A stretch of DNA of 64,000 nt, taken from contig CDRNVI010000040.1 of the NCBI GenBank assembly GCA_977017575.1, positions 186,001 to 250,000 of the forward strand, read 5' to 3'. This document shows, one piece after another, positions 16,857 through 31,242 of the stretch; within the stretch, counting starts at the first letter, position 1; the number at the start of each line of letters is the position of its first letter. The stretch is from Paramoeba atlantica. Taxonomy: Eukaryota; Protista; Discosea. The notes below the pieces were generated by a model. That model was not told the origin of the DNA and did no database searches. It saw only the letters and a list, made by a program, of their open reading frames with translations. The translations under genes and the position numbers were made by a program.

Positions 16857-17423
16857 TCTTTTTTAGGCTCTTCGTTAAACGCGGTGGTTGTTTTCAACTT
16901 AGAAGTCACTCATGCTGTGCGCTTCGCATTGAAAACTACCGCCGCGTTTAACGAAGAGCCTAAAAAAGAAAAATCTCCAAAAGATCATGAATAATCCATT
17001 TTTTTGGGGGAAAAAGCTCGATTTTTCGACAAAAATTGCGAAATTTTACACCATTTTTGGGCCGTTTTGGATGCCTTACCAGTAGGAGAAGGAGTCGAAT
17101 CTGTCGACAAAAACGTCGTAGAATGGTAGCTGAGGTCCAAAACTCTCCAAATACGGTTTAGGAGTCGATTTTGGAAAAATAATATTTTTACTTTTTGGGT
17201 CAAACGTTTTTTTTTTGGTACCCCAAAAATTTCGGAGTTTTTGACCTTGTCGGACCCCTTCCGCGCGTACCAGAGGGGGGTACGCCCAGGTGTGGGGGGG
17301 TGGAAATTCATCGCCGCGGCTTACTCTACCACTTCCCCGCGCTCGATTTCGAAAATCAAGATTTTGAAACGACGTATGCCCCCTGGACCCCCCCTGGACC
17401 CCCCCCCCCCATGGACCCCCCAT
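16857..17423 (+). mobile_element. Hairpin-capped repeat (family H), left part, interrupted by retroelement A
   Basis: 113-bp palindrome 16857-16969 followed by about 450 bp aligning with 54360-54735 and, inverted, with 34750-34975. Confidence 0.7.
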
Positions 17424-17425
17424 CT

Positions 17426-17459
17426 TTAACGATAAAGATACAGTTTCTGTACCTTGTTG
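17426..17459 (+). other. Spliced-leader exon-like sequence (34 nt, first 3 nt absent)
   Basis: TTAACGATAAAGATACAGTTTCTGTACCTTGTTG, identical to 23092-23125; contains the kinetoplastid SL core ACAGTTTCTGTAC; not followed by GT. Confidence 0.8.
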
Positions 17460-19362
17460 AATCCTTTTTCTTTTCTCTACCTCTACTCTTCTCTCCCCCC
17501 GATACATGCCCACGACACGACGTCGACGAGGCTACCGGGGGCGCAAGGATTCACCCGGTGGGCCCGATTCCCCACCTACCTCGACCTCAGGGGGACGCTC
17601 TACCACCCCTCTCAGGCGAGGTTCTAGCCCCCACTTCTCCACCGAGACTGTGGGGCTACACCAGCTCTCTATCGAGGAGCTGAAGAAGGCGAGGCCGGAC
17701 CTTGAAGTCCGTGCAAAGACCCCTTTCAAGTCCCGCGCGTGCGACTTCTGTGGCCTCCCTTTTGTGCCCGCCAGGCGGGATATGTGCTTTTGTGATGCGT
17801 GCATTTCCCTTCGAGCGCAGCACAGAAAAGACCTTCGCGCGCGTGCGAAGACGCAAACCCCCGGGATCCCTCCTCCCCTCTCTGCTTCTTCTCCTAGGTC
17901 CTCTCGACACCGGTCGGTAACCCGAAGACCCCCGCGCTCCATCTCTCCTCGGAGCCGCTCCCGGAACAGCGATGGCCCGCCACCCGGTGAGCGGTCGTTA
18001 TCCCTACCCACAATGGCACAGCAGTTCAAATCCATGGACGCTGTCCGCCTCAAGCTCCTTCCTGCCCGAACCGGCTCAAATCGCTTTTCCGCGGAGACAG
18101 GAAGATGCGCAGTCACCTTATGGCTGGCTGTGACCCTAAGCGCCGAACACGACGTAACATCAATGATGGAGAAAGAGGCCCGTGAACGTCGGGCCCTTAC
18201 ACTCGAAGCCGTTTGGACGCTGCACGACACCCACAAGTCCATCGAGGAGCGTATCTATCTCATTAATGAAGGGTGTCTGGTTGGCTCCGAATGCGGCATC
18301 GCACTCTTCAGCCGCACATTGTTGCCCTCCAGGCGCATCGCATCAAGGTGCACGGGCCGAAACGCCTAAGGGTTGCGTCACGGGCCCTGCTTCGGGAACA
18401 CGCCCCGGAAGCCCTCAGGAACAAGGCCGATCGCTTCTCCTCCTTCATGGCTCTATATGAGGAGTTCTGCACGATGGAGGCCCACCTCCAAAGGGCACAG
18501 GCGAGTGCGATGGCTGGCGACCCACCCTGGCCCCAGCCCACCTTTCGTTCTCCCCCTCTTCCCACACCTTTCCCTGGGATAGCGACGAAGCTAATCCCCT
18601 CGCAGGCTACACCTGCACCGCCAACCAATCCCCAGGTCGACTCTGTTTCAGAACCCTTCAAGATCCTGCTTGATCTTGGGCCGGAGTGAGCCGGATATGC
18701 CACTATCCCCTGCCCCCCGGACTCCTCTTTCCAAGCTTTCCTCGGCACAGTGGGGAACACTTTAGGGGTCCCTGGGGAAAATCTCCTCCTCAAAGACAGT
18801 GCTGGCGAAACCACCCCTATCACAGATCGGGAGGGCCTAGATCGCGCTCAACGAGTAGCGGTCAGCCTGTCCCTACCTCCGTACAACCCCCGTAACAACG
18901 AGGAGGCCGTTATTCGGGTGTACGATGGATCCATGCACGGGTTCATCAACGCCCCCGGACTGCAGGCAGCCCACCACATCCCGGCCGGTCTGAGTGAGAT
19001 TCTCGGTATTCCCCCAGTGCTGACTGGAGCTTGGAAACCTCGTGAATACGAGGAGGGCGTGCTATGGTGTTTCCTCCCTACAGAAACCCTAGTCAGCGAA
19101 ACGGGATGGACCACCCGGGTTGTCAAATGCAATCTACGCAGGGGATGCATCGAGGCAAACCCTGGCCCCAGACACAAGAACCGAGGGTCGCTGGCCTCAT
19201 CCGCGCCCCAGCCCCGGCAGGCACCGAGCGAGACTCCGAGTGCCCTCCTCCAGGAGCCCGACACCTCTTCCCCCAGCAGGGAAGGAACTATCATGGATGG
19301 AATCGCGGCTGTGACTTCTCCGCAACACCCTCCTCTCCATGCATCTTCCTCCCATGCTCCTA
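17426..19362 (+). mobile_element. Retroelement A: 5' part of an SL-headed non-LTR element (decayed, lacks RT)
   Basis: SL, pyrimidine-rich UTR, ATG 17506, CDFC-x11-CDAC finger, frameshift-split C2H2 finger, in-frame TGA at 18687, Ubl-like region, CNLRRGCIEANPGP; colinear protein similarity to 23166-24860; abrupt switch to AT-rich DNA near 19362. Confidence 0.78.
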
Positions 19363-19658
19363 ATAAAAGAATTGATCATTCGACGGAGCTATTACGGTGC
19401 ATTTCAACAAAAGACCAAATTTTTTCTTTCCTTCTGTTATTTTCCTACGGTGTATGATGCATCTCACCGATCATTCAAATTTTGCATGAACGAGAAATAT
19501 AGAAATAGAAATAGAAAAAACGTTCGCAAGGGGGAAAACAAGACCAGCGTTAAGAACTCAAGGAAAAAACCCAAACAAACTTCTTTAGAAATGTACTGTA
19601 GATATCAAATGGGTATAAAAGAGAACCAAGTTTTGATGTAAACGGCGTTACAGGTTAA

Positions 19659-20098
19659 CATGCCAGGGGGGCATGTTATGGTGCTACAGGCATGTTATGG
19701 TGTTACAGGCATGTTAAATTTCTGAACCTCCGTTTGAAAAAATAAGGAAAGCAATCGACACAAAAATTCTACATGAAAAAGGTCGGAGAACTCTACTATC
19801 AGGAGCTCAACACCTTCATCAGCAGCTTCGTCTTCCTCATCATCATCCTCTTCTTCTTCTTCCTGCTTGTCTTCCTCTTCCTCACCCTCCTCCTCTTCTT
19901 CAGAGAATTCTTCTTCACAGGATTCCTCACGAGTATGACCCTGATTCGACAATGAAAAATGAACACATTATAAAAAAAATACAGATTAAAGAAACGAGAG
20001 GAAAATATAGTGTATTAAAAAAAGGCTCGGCTTCGCCGAGAAAATCAGAAGGGGAGGGCATGTTATAAGGGTATGTTACATGCCGGGGGGGGGGCATG
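19659..20098. mobile_element. TTAA-flanked 440-bp MITE-like unit with GGCATGTTA repeats
   Basis: TTAA at 19655 and 20099, palindromic CATGCC..GGCATG ends, five or more GGCATGTTA-like motifs; encloses an acidic low-complexity stretch. Confidence 0.4.
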
Positions 20099-20299
20099 TT
20101 AACGTGATATAGGCATTTTAACCCGTGCTCTCGTTTATAAGAAAATGCTTTACTGAATTCGCACACATCAGAAATGTGTCATAAATATTCATTCAACAAT
20201 CGCATCGATTTGAGAATCCAATCGCTTAATATTGCAGTACACCGCCATCTTTTCCGGAGATATACTGCCTTGTCGACTACTGTACTTATGTGACATTAC

Positions 20300-21070
20300 T
20301 GAATCGCATTACTGGAATCGCAATCAGTGACTATGGGTCGAACCCAAAGGTAGCATCTTACAGCACGATGAACAGCATTGTTCATTGAGGCAAAGTCGCT
20401 TTCGCCCAAAATACCCAAACGCCGATATAGCTCGTCAATCTTTTTGGGCACCATTGAACGCACCATGCTTTTCATGATACATGGGCGGCAGTACCCAGTG
20501 GTGAGGACCTACGTATAGCACCGCTACCATAATGTGTTCCCCGAGAACCTGATCGGTGCCTCCGTCTAAAGCAATTCCAAACAACTCGTAGCTGTCGACC
20601 AGCTCATGAATTTGGCGCCATAATTTCGCTTCCAAGACGGCCATGTCGATTTCCAAAGTACCTACTTCTTTTGGCATGGTCCGCAGAATGTCACCTCTCG
20701 GGCGCATTGTACGGCCATCGTTGTCCAATCTGTTGCGCGAAGTGCAGGGCGACCGATAGAGGAATATTGGTGGATGCAGCGATGGTAGGAAAATCAGTGT
20801 GCCAAAATTCGTATAGTGTCTTCTCCTCCTGCACTAACGCCACAGATTGTTTCGAAATTCCATATGATTTAGGTGGCGGTTGTATGTCAATTCACAAAGA
20901 GAATGAAAAATTTCGGAGCAGCGCTTGCAACGTAGATGAATAAAGTGGTTCATTTGATCCAGCAGAGCAAGATCATCGCACATATTGCGTTTTTCCGATG
21001 AAAGACATGCAATGGCTGCCGTACAAACTTCATCAACGAAATTTTCCTTGATCGAATGAAGTCTGGGCAA
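20300..21070 (-). pseudogene. Degraded hAT-like transposase
   Basis: CKRC..RHLNH BED-like finger, NIPLSV..F..P.R..L region and FGIALDGGTD first-Asp motif, split by a stop and frameshifts. Confidence 0.5.
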
Positions 21071-21604
21071 GGCGGGCCCTCTCCTCTTCCGCTTCGAAGT
21101 TCGACGGGGGGGTCACGAGAGATTTCATCGAGAGAAGTTTGACTTGGAGCCTCTGCCCTACGCTCTGCGAGAGTAGTAGCCGCTTCTCGACGGGCACTAG
21201 CAGTGGCTAAGTTGTAAATAAGAGCAGCAGTATATTGCGAGTGCACAAACACTCGGTGTTTGTGGACCACATTTCGGTAACTTCGGTACGTAAAATTTCT
21301 TTCCTTGCAACAGATTCTTCAATTTCTATTTGAGAAAACAGAACATGCCGACATAAAGCGTTAGCTCGGAGTACGAGTTCAGACATTTGAAGAGAGAGCA
21401 CATGCTTTTCACCATGAGTTTCAACGTACGCCCTCACTCGTTCGTTCCGTCGACAAAGTTCTCGTTGAGATAGTTGACCTGATATTGACAAGTATTGGGT
21501 AACCAAACTGCGCGGCTCGGAATACTTTTCTTTGCCCTTCTTGCGTGGCATAAAACAATAGGACTTTGGTTGATTGTATAAAATTACCGCAGAAACACTT
21601 ATTA

Positions 21605-21982
21605 CTGTACCCCCCCCCTACTTATCTGTCACTACTTTTCGCGAAAAGGTGACAGATAACTAGGGCGGTAGGGGTGTGACAGATAACTAGGCGGATCAGT
21701 GTGCGACAGATAACTAGGGAGGGGGTCTGTCACAAAAAAAAGTCAGAACATGGAATTACAGAAACGGTTTATAATAGCACCACGCACGACTTTTGCTTGA
21801 AATACAAAAAAAAAGAATGTAAGTTTCATTTCATGACCTTTTTTGGAAAAAAGTATTTTACCTATTTTTAAAAAGCGACAGATAACTAGGGGGGGCAGTC
21901 GACCAAAAAAAAATCGAAGTGTCAAAAAGTGACAGATAACTAGGGGGGGTGATGTGTGACAGATAATTAGGGGGGGGTACAG
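21605..21982. mobile_element. TA-flanked MITE (Tc1/mariner-type ends), 378 bp
   Basis: About 28-bp TIR CTGTACCCCCCCC.TA.TTATCTGTCAC, TA on both sides, internal GACAGATAACTAGG repeats. Confidence 0.8.
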
Positions 21983-22884
21983 TAATACAAAACCTAAGTT
22001 TAATACAGAAACAAATAATATATTACTCATTGGATACGCAACCCAGGAACAACGGGGCGCGAAGCGCCGCGAGCTCCGTTTTTACCAGTACTGTTTCTAG
22101 AACTTTCTGGTTTTATATAAATTTGTAGAAAACTAGGAAGCTTCTTCGGTTAGAACTTATAAAGAATTATGAAAGGGGGGGTAATGCTTGTTTCTGTCTT
22201 ACGCTTGTTATGATATTGAATGGCACCAAGTTCGAGAAGCTTCTTTCTTACTTCGTCTACACCGTCTGTCTCCTACTCAGAACTTTCATAGGCTTTGGCG
22301 CGGTACACTTCTCTCAGCAGAACCCTAAACTTTTCGGGGCTAGGAGGAAGCTTCTCGATGAACGCTTTGATCTTAGCTCGGAGCGATGCAGGTTAGGAAT
22401 TCACTTCTCCAGTGAAGCTGTTCCAAACGTTTTTGAGAACCGTGGACATAGTACGTTCCCCCTTACTGTCCAATGGATGTTCAATTTTTGGACAAAGTTG
22501 ATAGATGCGCGCACGTACTTCGTTCCATCATTCGCCCAGGCAATTCTCTTTTTGCACGCCATAATGACGTGGGCAACATGAGAAAATGTTAGTCGAAGGC
22601 CGCAAAGACTACGCCGAAAGAATTGACTTGACAAAGAACGCATCGACCCTTTTGTTCATCTGGAGTCGGGCACCACTGGCAATAAATGCAAAAAGAAGGG
22701 CGGTTCGGACGCGAAATAGTGAACGATGTCGTGGTCTGACACTATCTCAAGCATTGCTTTCGAAGAATGGAGGATTGTATATTTATGAGTAAATACTATT
22801 GGGATTGTTTCTTACTTGTTCTATTTTGTAAGCCTGCGACAGTAATTCAACATTAACCTACTTCCCCCTCCATAAGTAATTATA

Positions 22885-23064
22885 CTGTCCCCCCTCCCCT
22901 TAAGCGCACCCGGCCAGACCCCCCTGTTTAAGCGCACACAGAGTTGAAGAGAAGGGGGCCGGCGGCGCGAAGCGGCGCCAATTTTTTTTTACGTAACGAT
23001 TCAGACCCCCCCGTTTAAGCGCACTTTTCACGGAAAACGAGGTGCGCTTAAACGGGGGGGACAG
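22885..23064. mobile_element. 180-bp TA-flanked MITE
   Basis: TIR CTGTCCCCCC..TTAAGCGCACC, TA duplication, internal CCCC(C/T)GTTTAAGCGCAC repeats. Confidence 0.8.
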
Positions 23065-23088
23065 TAAGTATAAATTATAAGTTTTTTG

Positions 23089-23125
23089 AACTTAACGATA
23101 AAGATACAGTTTCTGTACCTTGTTG
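23089..23125 (+). other. Spliced-leader exon-like sequence (37 nt)
   Basis: AACTTAACGATAAAGATACAGTTTCTGTACCTTGTTG; starts AACT and ends TTG like kinetoplastid SL exons; no GT donor follows. Confidence 0.82.
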
Positions 23126-25020
23126 ATTTATTTCCTCCTTTCCTTCACTACTACTTCTCCCCCCCATGTCAGAACTCCCGCTCAAGGGACTCTTGTTCTG
23201 CGCTTACTGTGGCTCGAAATTCGAACCACTCTCCCCCACCCACCGGTTGTGCCCAGTCTGTTTATCCACAACCGGCACTGCGTCCCGTATCATTTGGGAC
23301 AAACCTAGCACCCTTGGGCCCGTTAACAACGGACTCAGGCAGACATCCACCTCCCGAGAGGCCAGAAGCATCCCCCAGAAGCATCCCCCAGAAGCATCCC
23401 CCAGAAGCTCGTCCTCCCGCGCGAGGTCGAACTCGAGACCGCCCCTTCACCGACAGTCCGAAGGACCTCACACACGCTCGCCATCCAGTGTATCTTTCGC
23501 CCCCAGGAACACTTCTTCACATGACTCCGAGTCATACGCCGACAAGGCCAAATCCCTTTCACCCCCGATTCTTAGGAAAACAAGGTTAGGTACAGATCCC
23601 CCCTCAAACCTCTACACCCCTTGGCAGAGCCCCATCACTCAAGGAACAGCTAGCTCTCATAGGTAAGATGAACCAGGATTTCCTGGGTATCTACATCAAA
23701 CACCAGCGAGACGACGGAGTGCCCTTCGGGTTGAAGAGGGAAGTGACAGCCAACCGGCTGTCATGCGCCGTCCGAGAAATAGAGAGAGAGTACCTGGCGA
23801 CGAGGGATGCCCTCTACACCGAGTGGCTTGACCTCCTCTGTCAGGACGCCCGTCAGGAATACAGACATCGCCAGCTTGTCATAGACAAAGCCCACCTGTG
23901 TCAGACCTGCGGACAGGTTTTTCGGGACCAGCGACGTATGATCGAGCACAAAACCGTCCACGAAGTGGCCGCGGCCCGGGCGATGGTATCCCGTCTCTCA
24001 TCAGAGCACCGCCAGGGAGCTATGATGATTGCGGAACAACAGTGGGCCTCTGCCGCCGACCTCTTCAGCCATCTCTACCAACAACTCCAAAACCTGTACG
24101 CACCCCCCCGGCCCCTCCCCCGACCCCTCCCCCAGCCCCTCCCCCGGCCCCTCCCCCGGCCCCTCCCCCGGCCCCACGGAAACGTACAACTTGGAAGTGG
24201 ACAACCCTCCCCCCCCACCTTGCCGCCAAACCTCCCGCCCTCACAAACACCCCAACCGACGCCCCTAGCGGCCCTTACCCATCACCTCCCCACCAGCAAG
24301 GCGGACACCAACTCTCATCTTCGACGCAACCCTCCGAAGAACCATGGACTAGGGTCAACCTGCACCTCGGACCCCACTTGGCCGGACACATCCAGGTCCC
24401 CGTCCCTGCCAGACACCCCCTACAGAGTTTCGTACAAGCGGTGGGCTTTACCTTGGGGGTCCCCCCCGACCGCATAAGCCTGACCAACGAGCCGGGAGGG
24501 CCATACCTGGTGACCGATGAGGACCTGGAAGAGGCTGAGTGCATTTGGGCCTCTCTGCTCACTCCAAACCACGGCCCCTCCCACGGTCCCCACGTCAAAG
24601 TCTTCGACGGATCGGGAGCAGGAGCAAGCATAGAGACGCCGTCTAATCTCCCAGGCGAACATATCCCCTTTTCCCTATGCCACGCCCTGGGTGTAGCCCA
24701 GTGCTTCGCAGGAGCCTGGACGCCGTTCGTGTCGGAGGGCGGAACGGCTTGCTGGAGCTTCACGCCCACGGAGGGACTGATAGCTGACTCGGGGTGGTCG
24801 GCCGAGTTAGTCCGGTGTAACCTCCGTAGAGGGTGCATCGAAGCCAACCCGGGACCACGCCGCGCAAAACGGAAGAATAAAACGCCCAAATCCTCCGGCC
24901 CCGCGGACAGTAACCCCGTGAACGTAACGGGACAGACGAGCACTCAAACCGAGGACACCCCCACCCCACTACCCGACCCCCACATTACAGACCCCATTCC
25001 CACACCCCCGCATCAGGGGG

Positions 25021-25405
25021 GGGCATGCCGGACGCCAGCGAGGATTGCGCCGAGGCTGGCAGCCTCAGAGCGGGCCCGTATCCAAAATCCCATTGTAATG
25101 GGGGGTCCATCCCGACACACAACAGCCTGTCCTCGGGCCCTAAGTCCACATCCCCTGTTCTGGGGGGGCCATGCCGGACGCCAGCGAGGATTGCGCCGAG
25201 GCTGGCAGCCTCAGAGCGGGCCCGTATCCAAAATCCCATTGTAATGGGGGGCCCACCCCGACACCCAACAGCTTTTCTTCGGGCCCTAAGTCCACATCCC
25301 CTGTTCTGGGGGGGCCATGCCGGACGCCAGCGAGGATTGCGCCGAGGCTGGCAGCCTCAGAGCGGGCCCGTATCCAAAATCCCATTGTAATGGGGGGCCC
25401 ACCCC
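25021..25405 (+). repeat. 146-bp tandem repeat, about 2.6 copies, inside retroelement B
   Basis: ATGCCGGACGCCAGCGAGG recurs at 25025, 25171 and 25317. Confidence 0.95.
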
Positions 25406-25554
25406 GCACTCTCGCGGGACCCTGATCGAGCACATCGCGGCGGCCGCCAATGTGCCCAAAATTTCTCAGCGGACGACGGGAGAGGGGGGGACATCGGAGG
25501 TGGGGGGGTGTCTTCCACCACACGAAGCAAGCAATCCACCCCGACAACCCAGGG

Positions 25555-27694
25555 CATACCTATGTGTTCTATGAACACTTTTTTTTGTTCATTGAACACA
25601 TAGAACGCATTGAACACTTTTTGGGGAGGTACACATCACACGAACATGTCGATTATTATTCATAAAACCTTTTTGTTTTGCGCATATCCAAGTGATTACA
25701 CATGCCCTAGCTATGCAGTATAAGAATGCCGCGGTATGAGGTTCTCTCTTAGTACGCGTGGCAGCTTTTTTTGTACTCGCCGAACGTAATGCATTTCTCA
25801 TTTCAAAATATTTTGCTGTTGTTGTTGCAAAAAACTATTGTTTCCCTCATTTAGTCAAGCATTATCTATTACCCTCAACAATTTCTAATGAGAGGACGAG
25901 GTCCCACAGGAACCTTTCGTGCCCGTCGAAGAAAAATGGGAAGCCACCAATCCAAATACAAAAATAAATCCAGTATCCAATATGACCGACTTAAAGTCGG
26001 TTAAAAAGCTTCACACTTTCACCTTGAAAGCTTTCATCTATGACTTCCAAGTTCAGAGTTTATATTTGTCTGATACGGTACAAACAAACAATATTTTTCC
26101 CATAACCTACAAATAATCCTCAAGGTATTCAAAATTTGCAAAGATACAATTCCATCAATTCTTTCCTTACGTAGACGGTTTCCTATTACCGCCAGTTCTC
26201 GCAACCTTACCTCGAAGCACACTTCGTACCTCAGCTTCGCGCTTGGATGCCGGAATGTCTCGCGCTGGCCCATTTCCAAGGGATTTCATTTTGAGTAAGG
26301 CCTTCAAAGACCATAAAGGCTGTGAATTCTCCTCATTTTCCGAGTTGTCAGTTGTTTTTCTCCTTTTTGGTATCGGAAGCCGATCCACTTTCATGCGAAA
26401 CATAAATAATATACCATCAGCCTCACTTTCATACGAAACACAAGCCTTTATAAAATGATCACAGACGAATCCAATGGCTTGGGCGCTTAAAAATTATTCA
26501 AAAAGTGTGTTCAAAAATTAGTAATTTACGAGTGGATTATATTACGGTTACAGTGTTGTATTTAATTACGGTATTACTTAATTACGCTTTTAAGGTAAGC
26601 GTAATTAAATAATACCGTAATTAAATATAACACTGCAATCCATTTGCACCCCAATCCATTTCCATGGGGAACCACCCTCTCGAATGCGGTATTATTTTCC
26701 GAAATTGAAAAGTTTTTGCAAATTTTAGACCCCCTCCCCAGATGGAAATTTTCACCCCTGTATAAGCCTTTACTTATCCGATGTGTACAAAACGGTCTCG
26801 TTTGCCCCAAAACGTAAATACCGTATCGACAATACGGTATTAAGCTTTGACTCTCGCCTTATGCAGTGTATAAAATCGAACGGCGAAAAAATGACTAAAT
26901 GGTAATTCTTCTCTAAAATATACGTATTCGCTTCTTTTTGTTTCGTTTCTTCACGCGCAAAGTCTTTGTGTTGAGATCTGCAAAATGCTACAAAAATCAG
27001 CTCAAACGGATGCTTGTACGAAAGAAAAAGTGGTGGGTCACTTTTCATTGGGTGGGGTTTATGAACGCTTTCCGTGGTGGAGGGTGTTTATCGTCATGAA
27101 AGGCTCAATACAAAGGCAATGCTCTTCACCTGCGACTTGAAGAATATGATAGCCACGCTAACAAAGCAGCGAAAGACTTGGAGCGCTTTCATGGCCTGCT
27201 TCTGAATAGAAACCTGGGTCCAGATGAAAAAAAGAAAGTACTCGATACACTTGTGGGTGAAAGGGGACTTTTCAAAGAAAAAACCTGAATTTTTTTCCTC
27301 ATCTTCGTTGTCGTCATTTCCACTAAACATTCTTTTTGCACTGTGAACACATTATATGCATTAAAGAAGTTTGTGTGCCGAATTGATTAAACGCCTAACA
27401 CGTGTTAGGACCAACCTAACTGGGGGTTGGGGCCTCTTCGTGGTCCCCCTTGACGCTGGAATCATATCGATGGCACAGACTCGCACCACCTATTCTGCCA
27501 TGTACCTACATGTACGTGAGGATCTAGGTCGTGTAGTACCATCTGGGGCCATTTGAATGAAACAAAGCTTCAAAAAAAAATTGTTTGTACTTCAGGAAAA
27601 AAAATCGAAAAAGTGTTCTATTGGTTCATAAAAGTGTTCATTGAACCATAGAAACACTGAACACACACAAGTGTTCATAGAACACATAGGTATG
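25555..27694. mobile_element. 2140-bp non-autonomous TIR element with CCAGGG target duplication
   Basis: TIR CATACCTATGTGTTCTATGAACACTT; CCAGGG at 25549-25554 and 27695-27700 (2- or 4-bp readings also possible); removal restores an open frame; contains a Tc1 end fragment at about 26840-27062 homologous to 54745-54960. Confidence 0.85.
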
Positions 27695-27700
27695 CCAGGG

Positions 27701-30084
27701 CGCTCCAGTTGAGGAGCGTGGGCAAGCCCCTTCCCCCGAAAACTTAGCACAGCTCCTTGGGAGGGGGTCCTTACGTAAGCTGTACGCACTCCAATACCCG
27801 GCTTGGAAGGAATACACCGCCGGTGTATGCCATGATTTTATTAACAAGTCAGTGGAGGGCAAGGTCGAGATGGCCTGGAACCTCCTCCTCGCCGTTAAAC
27901 GTTTCCTTTTTCTCCCCAAGGACAAGCTGTCGCCACGCCAGCTAGCGCGCGAACTGAGAATGCGTGCCCATCTAGAGGGTTCGGAGACCTTGACTCCATC
28001 CCCGAGTCAGGCCAACGGCCCCCCGTGGTCTGTCAAAAACGGGTCGAGGAATTGTGCAGGGCGGGTTGCTTCTCCAGGGCGGCCAAAACGATGGAGGCGC
28101 CCCTCAATCCTCCGGCCAACCCCACGGCGGCCCTAGAACAGGCTAAGCGTCCACACCCCACAGGCGGGCTCTACACTGCGGGGAAATTCAGGTACAATAG
28201 GGACCGACACGGAACCCTACCCTCCCCAGCCGATGTGGCCAGGAAGGCTCAAAGCCTGGCCCCTATCCGCGCCCCCGGACCTACGGGATGGACCAAGGAA
28301 CTGCTTGTCCCAATCCTCATGGAAGATGGACCCCGCGACTGTATCACGTGGATAATCCACGGGATAATGACTAACTCCCTCCCCCCCTCAATGAGGGAAC
28401 TGCTCACGGGGGCGTCTTTAAAACTATTCACCAAACCGGACTCCCCGGCGGGGCGCCACTCTTCCTACAGGCCCGTCGCCATGGGAGGGTGCATCCTCAA
28501 GGTGGCGGGGCTCCTTGCCCTGGATGAAATCCGGGAACATCTCCCCACTTACTTTCAGGGCATCTAGTTTGGAGCCCAATACACGCAGGGGTGTGAGCAC
28601 ATAATTTATAATGTGCGACAGCACTTCAGGGACAGGCCGAAGGAGGTCATCGTGGCTGCAGACCTCGAGAACGCTTTCAATAGCATCTCACGGTCGGCAA
28701 TTTTTAGGGCGGTAAGGGGGGATCCGAAACTTCTCCCCATTGAGGGCATCACCCTTTTCAGCTACGGTACCACAAGTACCCTTCACCTTGGGGAAGGCCA
28801 ATGCATCACGAGCTCAAGGGGGGTCAAGCAAGGTGACCCCATGGCTCCCATCCTATTTGCCATAGGGATCCAGGGGGCAATCGCCAGAGTGGCGGCCAAC
28901 TTCACAGGTGCGCTGAAGGTCTGGGCGTACCTAGATGACGTCACCTTTGCTGGTGAACCCAAGGTTTGCGCGGAAGCCCTAGAGGCCCTCCGCGAGGAGC
29001 TGAAGCATCTTGGGCTACGGCTAAATACCGCTAAATGCAAAGTAACTACTAGACGCGAGGACCTCTTCTCCGAGTTCTCCGGATCTCGCATGGTCAACTC
29101 CCCCGGGGGGTCAAACTACTGGGGTCAAACTTCGTCGGGGTGTCGGAGGCTAGGGAGGAAGAATGGGTGCTTTCCAAGGCCCCCAAGGTAATCTCCTTCC
29201 TGGGGAAACTCAAGGACATTAGCAGGCAATGCGCCTTGCCCCTCTTAAGACTCTGTGAGAGTCCTCGATGGAACTGCATCGTAAGGACCCACGAGCCCCG
29301 GGTCACTAAAGTGGCCAATACCCAGGTCGACAAAGCTGTCCTGGCATCTGCTGAGGCCTTGCTCGGGGGGATGGGCTCCTTGGGAAAAACGCCGTTCTCC
29401 AATAACCTTTTCACGGCAGATTTCCTGGGGACCATCCCCTTCGAGCACAAGGCGGAAGAAATACAGGCCAAGGCGAAGAACGCCCTACAGGGCCGACCCC
29501 AAGGCATGTCAGCCAAGGAACAGCGGCGCAACCTCTGTGAGGCCGCGTTGGGGAAAGCTCCGACGGCTACCCAACTGGTCTGCATGCGACAGACCCAGAA
29601 CATTCACTCCACTAAGTGGGTGAACGCATGGCCCAACAGGCCGGAGTATTACATGCGGGACCCGCAGTGGGAGACTGCGGCCCGTCTCCGGTACTTGGTC
29701 GCCGGGGGCCCGACATATGCTTCCAGCAGGGACGGAAGACCGCCCAAGTTGATGTCACAGTTGTGAACCCACTGGCCCCGTCCTACGTGGAGAAGGAGGC
29801 CGCAGAGCCTTCTCATACCCTGAGGATGGCCGAAGCGGCGCTCACACGATGAGATGGCGACCGCCTGAGGGAAGGAATTTTACCCCTTGGCCTTCACCAC
29901 GTACGGGATCCCGGACCCAGAGACCTTGAACTTCCTAACCAAGGTGGCCCGGGCCCACACATCCGACAAGAACGGATGCATGTCCCACCTTCTGATGGCC
30001 ATAGGGGTGGCCATCCAGAAAGGTAATGCCCAGATTGTACAGGCGGCAGTACAAGACTGGTACCGCCGCGGGGTACGAGGCTAG
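27701..30084 (+). pseudogene. Reverse transcriptase + restriction-like endonuclease of retroelement B
   Basis: APGPTGWTKELL, YRPVAMG, DLENAFNSISR, GVKQGDPMAP, AYLDDV, GLRLNTAKC, RGPDI..VDVTV, FYPLAFTTYG, QKGNA; TAG at 28565, several frameshifts, CCHC knuckle missing. Confidence 0.92.
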
Positions 30085-30594
30085 CTGGGCGATGGGGTTT
30101 AGGGAGAGGGAAAAAAATGTAATTATAATTATAATTACTTATGGATGTGAAACTGGTGAACCTGGAGGGGAGTAAAAGTTGTTATATTAGATACTTGCCA
30201 TCACAATTTCACAAATAAGCGCTTCAAATAGATAATCGTTCTAATCCTACGTCAGTAAGGTTATCAAGCTCATGAGGCGTGTATGTTCTAGTGATTCTTC
30301 GGAACGTATATTGTTGATCACTTTGCCAAATTGAGTTTCTAGAGCGTCTGTAATTGTTTGACGTAGAACGCATTCGTGCTCAAAAACGAGTTCATTGAAC
30401 TTAAGAGTTTCATCCAGAGCGTGCTCTCAGTCACTTTCACTCATTTCGAAAATGGGGCGAAACCAGAGAACTTTTTTCTCAACCTACCTTTTCGATGGTC
30501 TAACAACAACCGAAGTAAAGTCCACGAGAAAAATGGCCGTTGTGGCTTGCACAAGTTGTCACTGGCTTGCAGTGGCAGTACGCATGAGGTCCAT

Positions 30595-30650
30595 TAAGTA
30601 GTGACAGGAAAGTAGTGACAGGAAAGTAGTGACAAGAAAGTAGTGACAGG
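30595..30650. repeat. 14-bp tandem repeat (AAAGTAGTGACAGG) x4
   Basis: Read directly from sequence. Confidence 0.9.
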
Positions 30651-31242
30651 ATCTTTTTCCTAAAACAAAAAAAATCCAATCGGTCGAAGTTGCATTTATA
30701 ATTACTTATGAAAGACATAGGAATTATAAGTCATAAGGGAGTAAAAGTGCGAGTTCAAGGCGTATTTATAATTACTTATGGAGGGGGGAGTATACAGAGG
30801 AGTTTATAGAAAATCCTTTTTAAAAAACTTGAATATTACCGTATATATTTTCAGAAGAAAGAATGTTTATTGCGCATTACCGTTTAGATAGGCACATTAC
30901 CGTTTAAATGGCACATTACCGTTCGAATACGAATTAAAACGGTAACCGACAGACGGTTTAAGTGAAGGAAGTGAAGTGAAGGAAGTGAGGTGCAATAAGC
31001 CTTTAATATGCTATATCCAGAACATTAGTTTTTCCTATTCTTAGAAAATTTCTGAATTAGGATACTAGCAAAGTTGGATGAATATCCTAATTCGACCTTT
31101 TTCAGCTTAATATCCTAATTCGCCTTCAGTATTATGCTAATTCAGCTTAATATCCTAATTCCGAATTAGGATATTGTTTCGACTTGCGGTTTATTATAAA
31201 TATTTATGCACTAAAACCTAGTATATCAAATTTGTTCTACCT

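What the first reader, a model, noticed from the sequence alone, without database searches (positions are those of the whole stretch)
19128..24857. 2A-like ribosome-skipping motif conserved in both SL-headed elements
Seen: CNLRRGCIEANPGP occurs at 19128-19169 and 24816-24857 with 14/14 identical residues while 11 of 14 codons differ synonymously, and sequence just after NPGP is unrelated. Known: StopGo peptides end D(V/I)ExNPG-P and occur in APE-type elements such as L1Tc/ingi. Inference: this is a D-to-C variant 2A that separates an N-terminal zinc-finger protein from the RT-REL enzyme within one ancestral ORF. I do not know of 2A in CRE-clade REL elements.
Basis: partly seen in the sequence, partly recalled or inferred. 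Interest (0 to 1): 0.82.

Follow-up and report, generated by a model that had tools for sequence, protein, structure and literature searches.

The report
StopGo (2A) site in REL-type retrotransposons
Two decayed copies of a kinetoplastid retrotransposon keep a textbook ribosome-skipping (2A/StopGo) peptide that, in intact relatives, sits in one long reading frame between a zinc-finger/ubiquitin-like protein and the reverse transcriptase-endonuclease; this extends a known trick to a class of elements where I found no report of it.

Summary
CNLRRGCIEANPGP is encoded at 19128-19169 and 24816-24857, 14/14 residues are identical and 11/14 codons differ synonymously. The identical run is 15 residues in a domain otherwise 33% identical.

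CIEANPGP fits the experimentally supported StopGo core (D/G/C/N)(V/I)ExNPGP. Natural p12=C variants were highly active in vitro (PMC12846837).

Relatives from an assembly of the same organism show the intact layout in one ORF: spliced-leader head, Zn ribbons, C2H2 finger, tandem ubiquitin-like domain, a ~22-aa GW...L.RG(G/C)(I/V)ExNPGP peptide, basic linker, RT. Family members vary only at p12 (C/G), p13 (I/V) and p15, the positions StopGo tolerates.

AlphaFold places the peptide just outside the confident fold. The RT-endonuclease part matches solved R2 proteins through the C-terminal endonuclease (E~5e-49). The nearest named relative is Crithidia CRE1.

An intact CRE1-like element from another kinetoplastid carries two further sites (NVEANPGP, GVEENPGP).

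Both window copies are dead: frameshifts, a stop, a 2.1-kb TIR insertion, and in a sister strain a 14-nt deletion through the element-1 motif.

Skipping itself is untested. I read it as a real StopGo site (about 0.72): a new variant of a known kind, of moderate interest.

The parts
17426..17459 (+). Element 1: spliced-leader (SL) head
   Evidence: It shares the 42-nt repeat D7 with element 2 and contains the kinetoplastid SL core CAGTTTCTGTAC. The sequence was read.
17506..19103 (+). Element 1: remnant of the N-terminal protein. It has a Zn ribbon at about 17740-17808, a C2H2 remnant at about 18290-18340 and a tandem ubiquitin-like domain at 18690-19103. It is broken by frameshifts and by a TGA at 18687.
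   Evidence: ORFs and frame walk; Zn-ribbon match to element 2; alignments A1 and A2. The TGA at 18687 is CGA in the sister strain L005.
19104..19169 (+). Element 1: 2A/StopGo-like peptide GWTTRVVKCNLRRGCIEANPG|P
   Evidence: In the orthologous locus L005 a 14-nt deletion removes CIEANPG.
19170..19370 (+). Element 1: basic then P/S/T-rich linker remnant. The copy ends here and no RT follows before 22900.
   Evidence: Comparison with P0005 and P0002.
23089..23125 (+). Element 2: full SL head (AACTTAACGATAAAGATACAGTTTCTGTACCTTGTTG), 40 nt before the ATG at 23166
   Evidence: In the one run labelled 'RNA?' (X5) the same 35-37 nt lie within the first 60 nt of two contigs, or 292 nt in for a third, and are followed by different sequences.
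23166..24791 (+). Element 2: N-terminal protein region in three frame pieces. It has a Zn ribbon at 23199-23267, a C2H2 finger at 23890-23961, a PPPA repeat at about 24093-24187 and a tandem ubiquitin-like domain at 24375-24791.
   Evidence: The fold was assigned from a model of the relative P0010.
24792..24857 (+). Element 2: 2A/StopGo-like peptide GWSAELVRCNLRRGCIEANPG|P
24858..25552 (+). Element 2: basic start of the downstream product (PRRAKRKNK...) and linker, including three 146-nt tandem repeats at 25000-25437
25553..27696 (.). Foreign insertion: a 2144-bp element with 42-nt imperfect terminal inverted repeats and no ORF longer than 95 aa. It splits element 2.
27697..30084 (+). Element 2: RT-proximal region, RT (Pfam RVT_1, about 28628-29050) and a REL endonuclease remnant (about 29760-30084: DVTVVNPLA..., FYPLAFTTYG, AIQKGNAQIV), spread over three frames
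   Evidence: Homology to the linker and RT-proximal part of P0005. Family consensus and match to R2 structures.
30085..30117 (+). Element 2: short 3' tail ending in A7

Best explanation
The motif is the C-terminal core of a StopGo (2A) ribosome-skipping peptide. It belongs to a family of non-LTR retrotransposons of the RT plus restriction-like-endonuclease (REL/RLE) type in a kinetoplastid.

In an active element the RNA carries the host spliced leader at its 5' end and holds one long ORF. The ribosome first makes an ORF1-like protein of about 530-560 aa: Zn ribbon(s), a C2H2 finger and a tandem ubiquitin-like domain.

When the ~22-aa tail GW(S/T)xxxVxxxLxRG(C/G)(I/V)ExNPG occupies the exit tunnel, peptide-bond formation to the next Pro fails. 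The upstream protein is released, and translation continues from that Pro to make the basic-linker/RT/REL enzyme. One capped, trans-spliced, monocistronic mRNA would thus yield two proteins.

Shown here:
- the motif and its selective conservation;
- its fit to the published functional core;
- the continuous ORF in relatives;
- its position just after a folded domain;
- the REL-type nature of the enzyme.

Inferred, not shown: that skipping actually happens, and how efficiently.

The two copies in the window are dead relics and no longer express anything of the kind.
For: 1. Core fit. CIEANPGP matches (D/G/C/N)(V/I)ExNPGP. p12=C and p12=G are over-represented natural variants, and p12=C/N gave more than 95% activity in native context.

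2. Selection on the peptide, not the DNA. There are 15 identical residues with 13 synonymous nucleotide differences, in a domain otherwise 33% identical (3 of 200,000 shuffles).

3. Family-wide variation follows the StopGo degeneracy. Intact sites are CIEANPGP, GIESNPGP, GVEQNPGP and GVEWNPGP, so only p12, p13 and p15 vary. Obviously decayed copies break the invariant positions (CIKSNPGP, CIEANPRP, GLEWNRGP, CVEWNPDP).

4. Continuous ORFs across the site in L001 (1096 aa, from the ATG 17 nt after the SL into RT) and L002.

5. Modularity. P0012 and P0013 carry a second tandem copy of just the GW...RG.VE.NPGP unit.

6. AlphaFold2 model of P0010:225-470. pLDDT is above 83 up to residue ~150 and below 50 from residue 156. 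The W of GW is residue 157 and NPGP is residues 174-177, so the peptide is not buried in a fold.

7. Independent occurrence. P0047 is an intact 1855-aa CRE1-like element (31% identity over 623 aa, E=4e-69) from another kinetoplastid. It has a full 39-nt SL head and a poly(A) tail, and carries IIGNVEANPGP and IRGGVEENPGP.

8. Chance expectation of the core in the six-frame window is 4.7e-4, against two observed.

9. 2A sites are reported as functional in kinetoplastid L1Tc/ingi, and a paper title reports 2A as an expression tool in T. cruzi (abstract of PMC3708506 and title of PMC10830525).
Against: - No functional assay exists for this peptide.
- The six residues upstream of the core (CNLRRG, TQLIRG) do not match, as I read the text descriptions, any of the six described upstream motif classes. 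Upstream context is essential for activity, although 28% of viral sites are likewise unclassified.
- In deep mutational scans of F2A and P2A no substitution of D12 was well tolerated, so activity of p12=C depends on context.
- Large screens report that only about 7% of retroelement-associated predicted 2A peptides were highly active, and that many retrotransposon 2A-like peptides lower protein abundance rather than separate products.
- All copies seen in this organism carry some damage. No fully intact element with REL was recovered, and the one run labelled 'RNA?' (X5) covered only the SL, not the element body.
Confidence: 0.72

Rival explanations
1. It is a 2A-like translational attenuator rather than a separator. 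The peptide stalls or aborts ribosomes, so that little RT-REL is made relative to the N-terminal protein, with little or no clean StopGo restart.
For: A high-throughput screen of eukaryotic 2A-like peptides reports that most retrotransposon-associated ones reduce protein abundance (70% of ORF1p and 59% of ORF2p cases). Another screen found most retroelement 2A peptides only mid-range in activity. The upstream context here is unclassified.
Against: The core is canonical at every invariant position (E14, N16, P17, G18, P19). Natural p12=C/G/N sites tested in native context were highly active. The RT-REL enzyme must still be made for the element to move.
Confidence: 0.14
2. It is a ubiquitin-like processing site. 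The tail ...L(x)RGG after a tandem ubiquitin-like domain is cut by a host deubiquitinase or Ubl protease, as in ubiquitin fusion proteins, and the NPGP is incidental.
For: The domain in front of the site has an ISG15/di-ubiquitin-like fold (Foldseek E down to 9e-6). The G-subfamily reads LIRGG, LVRGG or LLRGG, which resembles the LRLRGG tail of ubiquitin and ISG15 (from general knowledge).
Against: The subfamily in the window has RGC, not RGG, and site 1 of P0047 has IGN. What is invariant is (I/V)ExNPGP downstream of the would-be cut, which a deubiquitinase does not need. About 25 residues, including a predicted helix, separate the last strand of the fold from GG, whereas ubiquitin has about 4. 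The GW...NPGP unit is duplicated on its own without a Ubl domain.
Confidence: 0.06
3. It is a conserved structural or binding motif at a domain end (for example a docking site or nuclear-import signal) with no recoding role. The match to 2A is a coincidence, inherited by both copies from one ancestor.
For: The two window copies are homologues, so their shared motif is a single evolutionary event. Basic residues follow the site.
Against: The chance of the eight-residue core is about 4e-9 per position. It recurs in two further forms in a different, CRE1-like element. The pattern of tolerated and untolerated substitutions mirrors StopGo rules. The segment is outside the confident fold.
Confidence: 0.06
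4. The conservation is an artefact of recent gene conversion or of assembly.
For: None found.
Against: There are 13 synonymous differences in 45 nt. An independent assembly of the same locus (L005, 98.4% identical) carries the element-2 motif unchanged apart from one synonymous change. Contigs of public runs cover the element-1 site (19000-19234 and 19000-19185) without gaps; for element 2 only summed depth was recorded across the site.
Confidence: 0.01

Closest known systems
2A sites of L1Tc (Trypanosoma cruzi) and ingi (T. brucei) non-LTR retrotransposons, and of APE-type non-LTRs of animals (Heras 2006; Odon 2013, PMC3708506)
   Same: The host group is kinetoplastid. There is an in-frame D/G-type (V/I)ExNPGP core inside a non-LTR retrotransposon ORF, and it serves the same presumed purpose of getting more than one product from one ORF.
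   Different: Those elements are APE-type and the site lies at or near the N-terminus, ahead of the APE domain (for L1Tc/ingi from general knowledge; for other non-LTR clades). Here the enzyme is RT plus REL. The site lies about 530 aa in, after an ORF1-like Zn-finger/ubiquitin-like protein; p12 is C or G and the upstream context differs. Published ingi-type proteins of Perkinsela read GDVHPNPGP at the N-terminus, which is a different site in a different element.
Viral StopGo sites with p12 = C, G or N (Li et al. 2026, PMC12846837)
   Same: The core octapeptide class is the same, with G at p11 in the window copies. Native-context variants were shown to be active.
   Different: Those are RNA-virus polyproteins. 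The upstream hexapeptides here, as I read the text descriptions, fall into none of the six described motif classes. The conserved Trp sits 20 residues before P19, not at p3-p4 as in the WV(R/K)DLT motifs.
CRE clade (CRE1, CRE2, SLACS, CZAR) of trypanosomatids
   Same: It shares RT plus a restriction-like endonuclease, N-terminal zinc fingers, an internal repeat region, a poly(A)/A-rich tail and an association with the spliced leader. CRE1 is the nearest named relative.
   Different: CRE elements sit at a fixed position inside SL RNA genes. These copies instead begin with the whole SL exon and have unrelated upstream flanks. No 2A is described for the clade, and CRE1 itself (P0062) has no NPGP. 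Clade membership by phylogeny was not tested.
R2 retrotransposon proteins (solved structures 9nl3, 9dou, 9nl2, 8gh6)
   Same: The family profile aligns from RT through the C-terminal endonuclease (E=5e-49 to 6e-29). LINE-1 ORF2p aligns over the RT only.
   Different: In the solved R2 entries a single chain spans RT through the endonuclease, and from general knowledge its N-terminal zinc-finger/Myb part belongs to the same polypeptide. Here the zinc-finger part would be released as a separate protein.
ORF1p-2A-ORF2p fusions reported in the pseudoscorpion Cordylochernes scorpioides (bioRxiv 10.64898/2026.06.17.732966)
   Same: A 2A-like peptide is placed between an ORF1-like and an RT-bearing part in one ORF.
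   Different: Those are LINE (ORF1p/ORF2p-like) elements in an arthropod, not RT-REL elements. The APE domain appeared to be present in only one of the two.
ISG15 / linear di-ubiquitin
   Same: The predicted fold of the ~150 aa before the site is two beta-grasp lobes. The G-subfamily tail contains L-x-R-G-G.
   Different: Sequence identity is 10-18%. The tail is far longer than in ubiquitin, GG is not conserved in the family, and there is no evidence of conjugation.

Membership tests
StopGo / 2A peptide | Core octapeptide (D/G/C/N)(V/I)ExNPGP | tested here: met
   CIEANPGP occurs twice in the window. GIESNPGP, GVEQNPGP and GVEWNPGP occur in relatives, and NVEANPGP and GVEENPGP in P0047. The core definition comes from PMC12846837.
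StopGo / 2A peptide | The site lies in frame inside one ORF with coding sequence on both sides | tested here: met
   L001 has a 1096-aa ORF, L002 a 264-aa ORF across the site and P0047 an 1855-aa ORF. In the window the local ORFs 18750-19457 and 23898-25244 run across the site, but the elements are broken elsewhere.
StopGo / 2A peptide | Upstream nascent-chain context of a recognised class (L-rich...SG, (R/K)DLTxE, DLTxDG, PAPRLV and others) | tested here: not met
   CNLRRG and TQLIRG were compared by eye with the motif descriptions; no match was seen. Only G at p11 and L at p8 recall L-rich classes. 28% of viral sites are also unclassified.
StopGo / 2A peptide | Demonstrated release at Gly and restart at Pro | not testable with these tools
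   This needs a reporter assay or protein chemistry.
StopGo / 2A peptide | The peptide is not part of a folded domain and can act as a nascent chain in the tunnel | tested here: met
   The AF2 model has pLDDT below 50 from G380 to beyond P401 of P0010, directly after a confident fold.
REL/RLE-type non-LTR retrotransposon | Reverse transcriptase domain | tested here: met
   Pfam RVT_1 scores E=1.4e-16 on 28613-29191, and also hits L001, P0047 and P0062.
REL/RLE-type non-LTR retrotransposon | C-terminal CCHC plus PD-(D/E)xK-type endonuclease downstream of RT | tested here: met
   The family consensus reads C.CG...H.L.C...RH...RPDL...DVTV..P.A...K...Y...F.P....YG. The profile aligns to R2 chains up to residue ~1133 of 1169. 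A window remnant lies at about 29760-30084. The CCHC part is not readable in the window copy.
REL/RLE-type non-LTR retrotransposon | No APE endonuclease | tested here: met
   Pfam gives no Exo_endo_phos hit on the L001 ORF, P0047, P0063 or P0062.
CRE clade | RT groups with CRE1/CRE2/SLACS/CZAR in a phylogeny with the other REL clades (R2, R4, NeSL, Hero) | not tested
   The only evidence is that the nearest named hit is CRE1 (E=5e-18, 29% identity). No reference sequences of the other clades were available as tool objects.
CRE clade | Site-specific insertion at a fixed position inside the SL RNA gene exon | tested here: not met
   The whole SL exon precedes the element, and the upstream flanks of the two copies are unrelated. 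The same holds in L001 and L003.

The most novel reading that the evidence does not exclude
The site is a hybrid of a ubiquitin-like tail and a StopGo core. The element encodes an ISG15-like tandem Ubl whose ...L-x-R-G-G tail runs straight into (I/V)ExNPG|P. StopGo would then release a Ubl-ended protein that host deubiquitinases could trim to a free di-glycine, giving a retrotransposon-encoded, possibly conjugatable ubiquitin-like protein. On this reading the StopGo peptide of the family arose from a Ubl C-terminus.
Probability: 0.05. Interest if true: 0.8.

Novelty: new variant of a known kind. Interest (0 to 1): 0.55.

Why it matters
StopGo sites in retrotransposons have been described for APE-type non-LTR elements (L1Tc, ingi and several animal clades). 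The older REL-type clades are described as encoding one multifunctional polyprotein.

This family, together with an independent CRE1-like element, indicates that REL-type elements of kinetoplastids also use the device. Here it splits an ORF1-like zinc-finger/ubiquitin-like protein from the RT-endonuclease.

This fits kinetoplastid biology. A trans-spliced, SL-capped mRNA is monocistronic, so an element whose full-length RNA is both message and template cannot use a second initiation site. StopGo solves that.

The family also supplies natural p12 = C, G and N sites with an upstream context (GW...L.RG) that I could not match to the described motif classes. That makes it useful for testing how the nascent chain positions the core. 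It offers candidate native 2A sequences for expression tools in kinetoplastids.

Tried and rejected
- Single-sequence phmmer of the RT and post-RT pieces against PDB gave nothing useful. A family profile was needed.
- Nine long multi-stretch hits of the domain profile (P0007, P0014 and others) are T/N/S-rich repeat proteins (units TYTFTPT.G.C / GTW.P). They match the AW..W.F.PTE segment spuriously and none has NPGP.
- A search with the N-terminal 2A region of P0047 found only itself.
- The supplement of the Cell Reports 2A survey that lists Perkinsela peptides is not held. I therefore cannot say whether this family was among them. The published Perkinsela ingi-type proteins carry a different site, GDVHPNPGP.
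- The organism was not established. The SL core, gene density and strand polarity fit a kinetoplastid, and the published account of Perkinsela (SL fragments next to retrotransposons) resembles this genome. The window's SL string was found in no paper.
- The assembly holding P0047 (GCA_020049755.1) could not be assigned to a species. Its SL fits a generic 39-nt euglenozoan consensus.
- RNA evidence: the one run labelled 'RNA?' covers only the SL, not the element body, so there is no support for expression of these copies.
- One call to the look-up of sequencing runs was unanswered and was repeated.
- dN/dS proper was not computed. Synonymous sites between subfamilies are saturated (48% nucleotide identity) and copies within a subfamily are pseudogenes.

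Full report
**Observation**

Both stretches translate to CNLRRGCIEANPGP. Codon by codon, 11 of the 14 codons differ and every difference is synonymous.

With the next residue (Arg) the identical run is 15 aa. It carries 13 nucleotide differences in 45 nt and no amino-acid change.

The run ends a ~170-aa alignable domain (A1) that is 33% identical outside the run and 48% identical at nucleotide level. Shuffling the identity vector gave a run this long 3 times in 200,000.

NPGP occurs only twice in the six-frame translation of the whole window. Both occurrences are the complete core, for which 4.7e-4 chance matches are expected.

**Anatomy in the window**

Both motifs lie in GC-rich islands (0.53-0.59 against about 0.42). 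Each island begins with the same ~35-nt sequence holding the kinetoplastid spliced-leader core CAGTTTCTGTAC.

In the one run labelled 'RNA?' this sequence lies within the first 60 nt of two contigs and 292 nt into a third, followed by unrelated sequences. I take it to be the organism's spliced leader.

Element 2 (23089-30117) reads, in order:
- SL, then the ATG at 23166;
- a CxxC...CxxC ribbon and a C2H2 finger;
- a proline-rich repeat;
- the conserved domain and the motif;
- a basic stretch and three 146-nt repeats;
- a foreign 2144-bp element with 42-nt terminal inverted repeats (25553-27696);
- the RT-proximal region, RT (Pfam RVT_1, E=1.4e-16), an endonuclease remnant and an A-rich tail.

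Element 1 (17426 to about 19370) is a 5' fragment with the same order of parts and no RT.

Both copies are broken by frameshifts, and element 1 also by a stop. An independent assembly of the same locus from a 1.6%-diverged strain (L005) has a 14-nt deletion through the element-1 motif and a sense codon where the window has the stop. These are dead copies drifting neutrally. The conservation dates from when their two source lineages were active.

**Relatives**

A profile of the domain searched against 1.84 billion representative proteins found 17 true relatives. The eleven whose source I looked up all come from ENA, and the five traced to a contig all come from one assembly (ERZ24900291). That assembly also contains the window's locus.

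L001 holds an uninterrupted 1096-aa ORF. It starts 17 nt after an SL head and runs through two Zn ribbons, a C2H2 finger and the domain. It continues through ...SGWSKAQVRTQLIRGGIESNPGP, then GTKRGRPPGKK, a linker and RT as far as the YLDD region.

L002 has one ORF across CIEANPGP into the segment that corresponds to window ~27735. This shows that the 5' and 3' halves of element 2 belong together.

Across the family the intact sites are CIEANPGP, GIESNPGP, GVEQNPGP and GVEWNPGP. Visibly decayed copies break E14, P17 or G18. Two members carry a second tandem copy of just the GW...RG.VE.NPGP unit, which argues that this ~22-aa unit is a module in its own right.

**What the flanking proteins are**

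An AlphaFold2 model built on the family alignment gives a confident (pLDDT above 83) two-lobed fold for the ~150 aa before the peptide. Confidence collapses from the Gly-Trp onward.

Foldseek finds ISG15 and linear di-ubiquitin as best matches in the PDB, and ubiquitin-like proteins in AlphaFold DB.

Downstream, a 12-sequence profile of the RT-endonuclease relatives matches solved R2 proteins from RT through the C-terminal endonuclease (E=5e-49). It matches LINE-1 ORF2p over the RT only (E=2e-21). No APE domain is detected.

The nearest named relative is Crithidia fasciculata AAA75435.2, which I take to be CRE1.

A 34%-identical sister family (P0027, P0063) encodes MLLE, OGFr_N and RT-REL in a single ORF of 2130 aa or more, without any 2A.

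**A second, independent case**

P0047 is an intact 1855-aa ORF found in NCBI assembly GCA_020049755.1 and in a Logan run. It is 31% identical to CRE1 over 623 aa (E=4e-69) and has a CCHC knuckle, RNase H, RT and REL.

It starts 9 nt after a complete 39-nt canonical SL and its record ends in poly(A). It carries two sites...LLIIGNVEANPGP at aa 95 and ...LLLIRGGVEENPGP at aa 157.

StopGo cores therefore occur in REL-type elements of at least two kinetoplastid lineages, at different positions and with p12 = C, G and N.

**Comparison with what is known**

Li et al. 2026 (PMC12846837) expanded the core to (D/G/C/N)(V/I)ExNPGP. They noted earlier confirmation of D12G and D12C, and measured more than 95% separation for natural p12 = C/N sites in native context.

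They also showed that upstream residues are essential, and they defined six motif classes. As I read their descriptions, the present context fits none of them, as is true of 28% of viral sites.

In deep scans of F2A and P2A, D12 substitutions were not tolerated, so activity depends on context.

2A sites in non-LTR elements are established for L1Tc and ingi and for several APE-type clades (PMC3708506). That paper describes the REL clades as single-ORF multifunctional proteins.

Recent surveys find hundreds of 2A-bearing retroelement contigs without resolving REL types. They report that many are weak or reduce protein abundance.

A 2025 survey lists 2A peptides in Perkinsela. The published Perkinsela ingi-type proteins read GDVHPNPGP at the N-terminus, which is a different site.

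The 2025 trypanosomatid mobilome review describes the CRE clade without any 2A. I found no report of StopGo in a REL-type element. The library searched is incomplete, so this is not proof of absence.

**Mechanism and rivals**

Best reading (0.72): a genuine StopGo site that releases the ORF1-like protein and lets the ribosome continue into RT-REL. This allows one SL-capped monocistronic RNA to serve as both template and two-product message.

Rivals:
- Attenuator rather than separator (0.14).
- Ubiquitin-like RGG processing by a host protease (0.06). This is weakened by RGC in the window subfamily, IGN in P0047, the long tail, and the invariance of residues after the would-be cut.
- A non-recoding motif (0.06).
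- Artefact or gene conversion (0.01). This is refuted by the synonymous differences and by the independent assembly.

**Verdict**

The finding is a new variant of a known kind. Interest is moderate, because the mechanism is known and unassayed here. Against that, the element class, the ORF1-like/Ubl partner and the upstream context appear to be new.

Noticed in passing
window 25553-27696: A 2144-bp non-coding element bounded by 42-nt imperfect terminal inverted repeats (starting GGCATACCTATGTGTTCTATGAACAC...) is inserted in the linker of element 2. It looks like a non-autonomous DNA transposon.
   Followed up: partly
window 25000-25437: Three 146-nt tandem repeats (100%, 92%, 77%) lie in the linker just after the 2A site. 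They recall the 'internal repeat regions' drawn for CRE-clade elements in the 2025 mobilome review.
   Followed up: no
L005 5320-5345 (= window 19144-19165) and window 24819-24854: Two independent deletions hit the 2A-coding segment exactly. One is a 14-nt loss in the sister-strain allele of element 1. The other is a 34-nt skip in contigs of two public runs at the element-2-type motif. They may be chance or microhomology.
   Followed up: no
L001 7525-7582: A partial SL (TTTAACGATAAGGACGTC) sits directly in front of the full SL head of an element. This matches the 'relic SL plus SL' pattern that another first-stage note reports elsewhere in this genome.
   Followed up: partly
L003 1-5890 (NCBI GCA_020049755.1, JAHZTO010043940.1): An intact 1855-aa CRE1-like element has a complete 39-nt SL 9 nt before its ATG and its record ends in poly(A). 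This suggests that SL-headed, mRNA-like copies are not peculiar to the window's organism.
   Followed up: partly
P0063 (2130 aa, ENA), sister family of the window's RT-REL: A single ORF joins an MLLE (PABP C-terminal) domain, an OGFr_N domain, a region with Cys-box and His-box patterns like a USP deubiquitinase (judged by eye; no Pfam hit) and RT-REL. This is an unusual N-terminal domain set for a non-LTR element.
   Followed up: partly
P0010 402-412, P0009 339-349, P0013 ~145-155: In the G-subfamily the downstream product begins with KRGRPPGKK or RPRGRPKG right after the StopGo proline. This resembles an AT-hook (RGRP core, from memory) and was not tested against a model.
   Followed up: no
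window 21649-21994 and 30553-30667: Short arrays of GTGACAGATAACTAGG-type and AAGTAGTGACAGGA-type repeats flank the elements. Depth in public runs is very high at 21561-21954.
   Followed up: no
window 17380-17425: A C-rich run (CCCCTGGACCCCCCCTGGACCCCCCCCCCCCATGGACCCCCC) lies immediately upstream of the SL head of element 1. It is unlike the A/T-rich sequence upstream of element 2.
   Followed up: no
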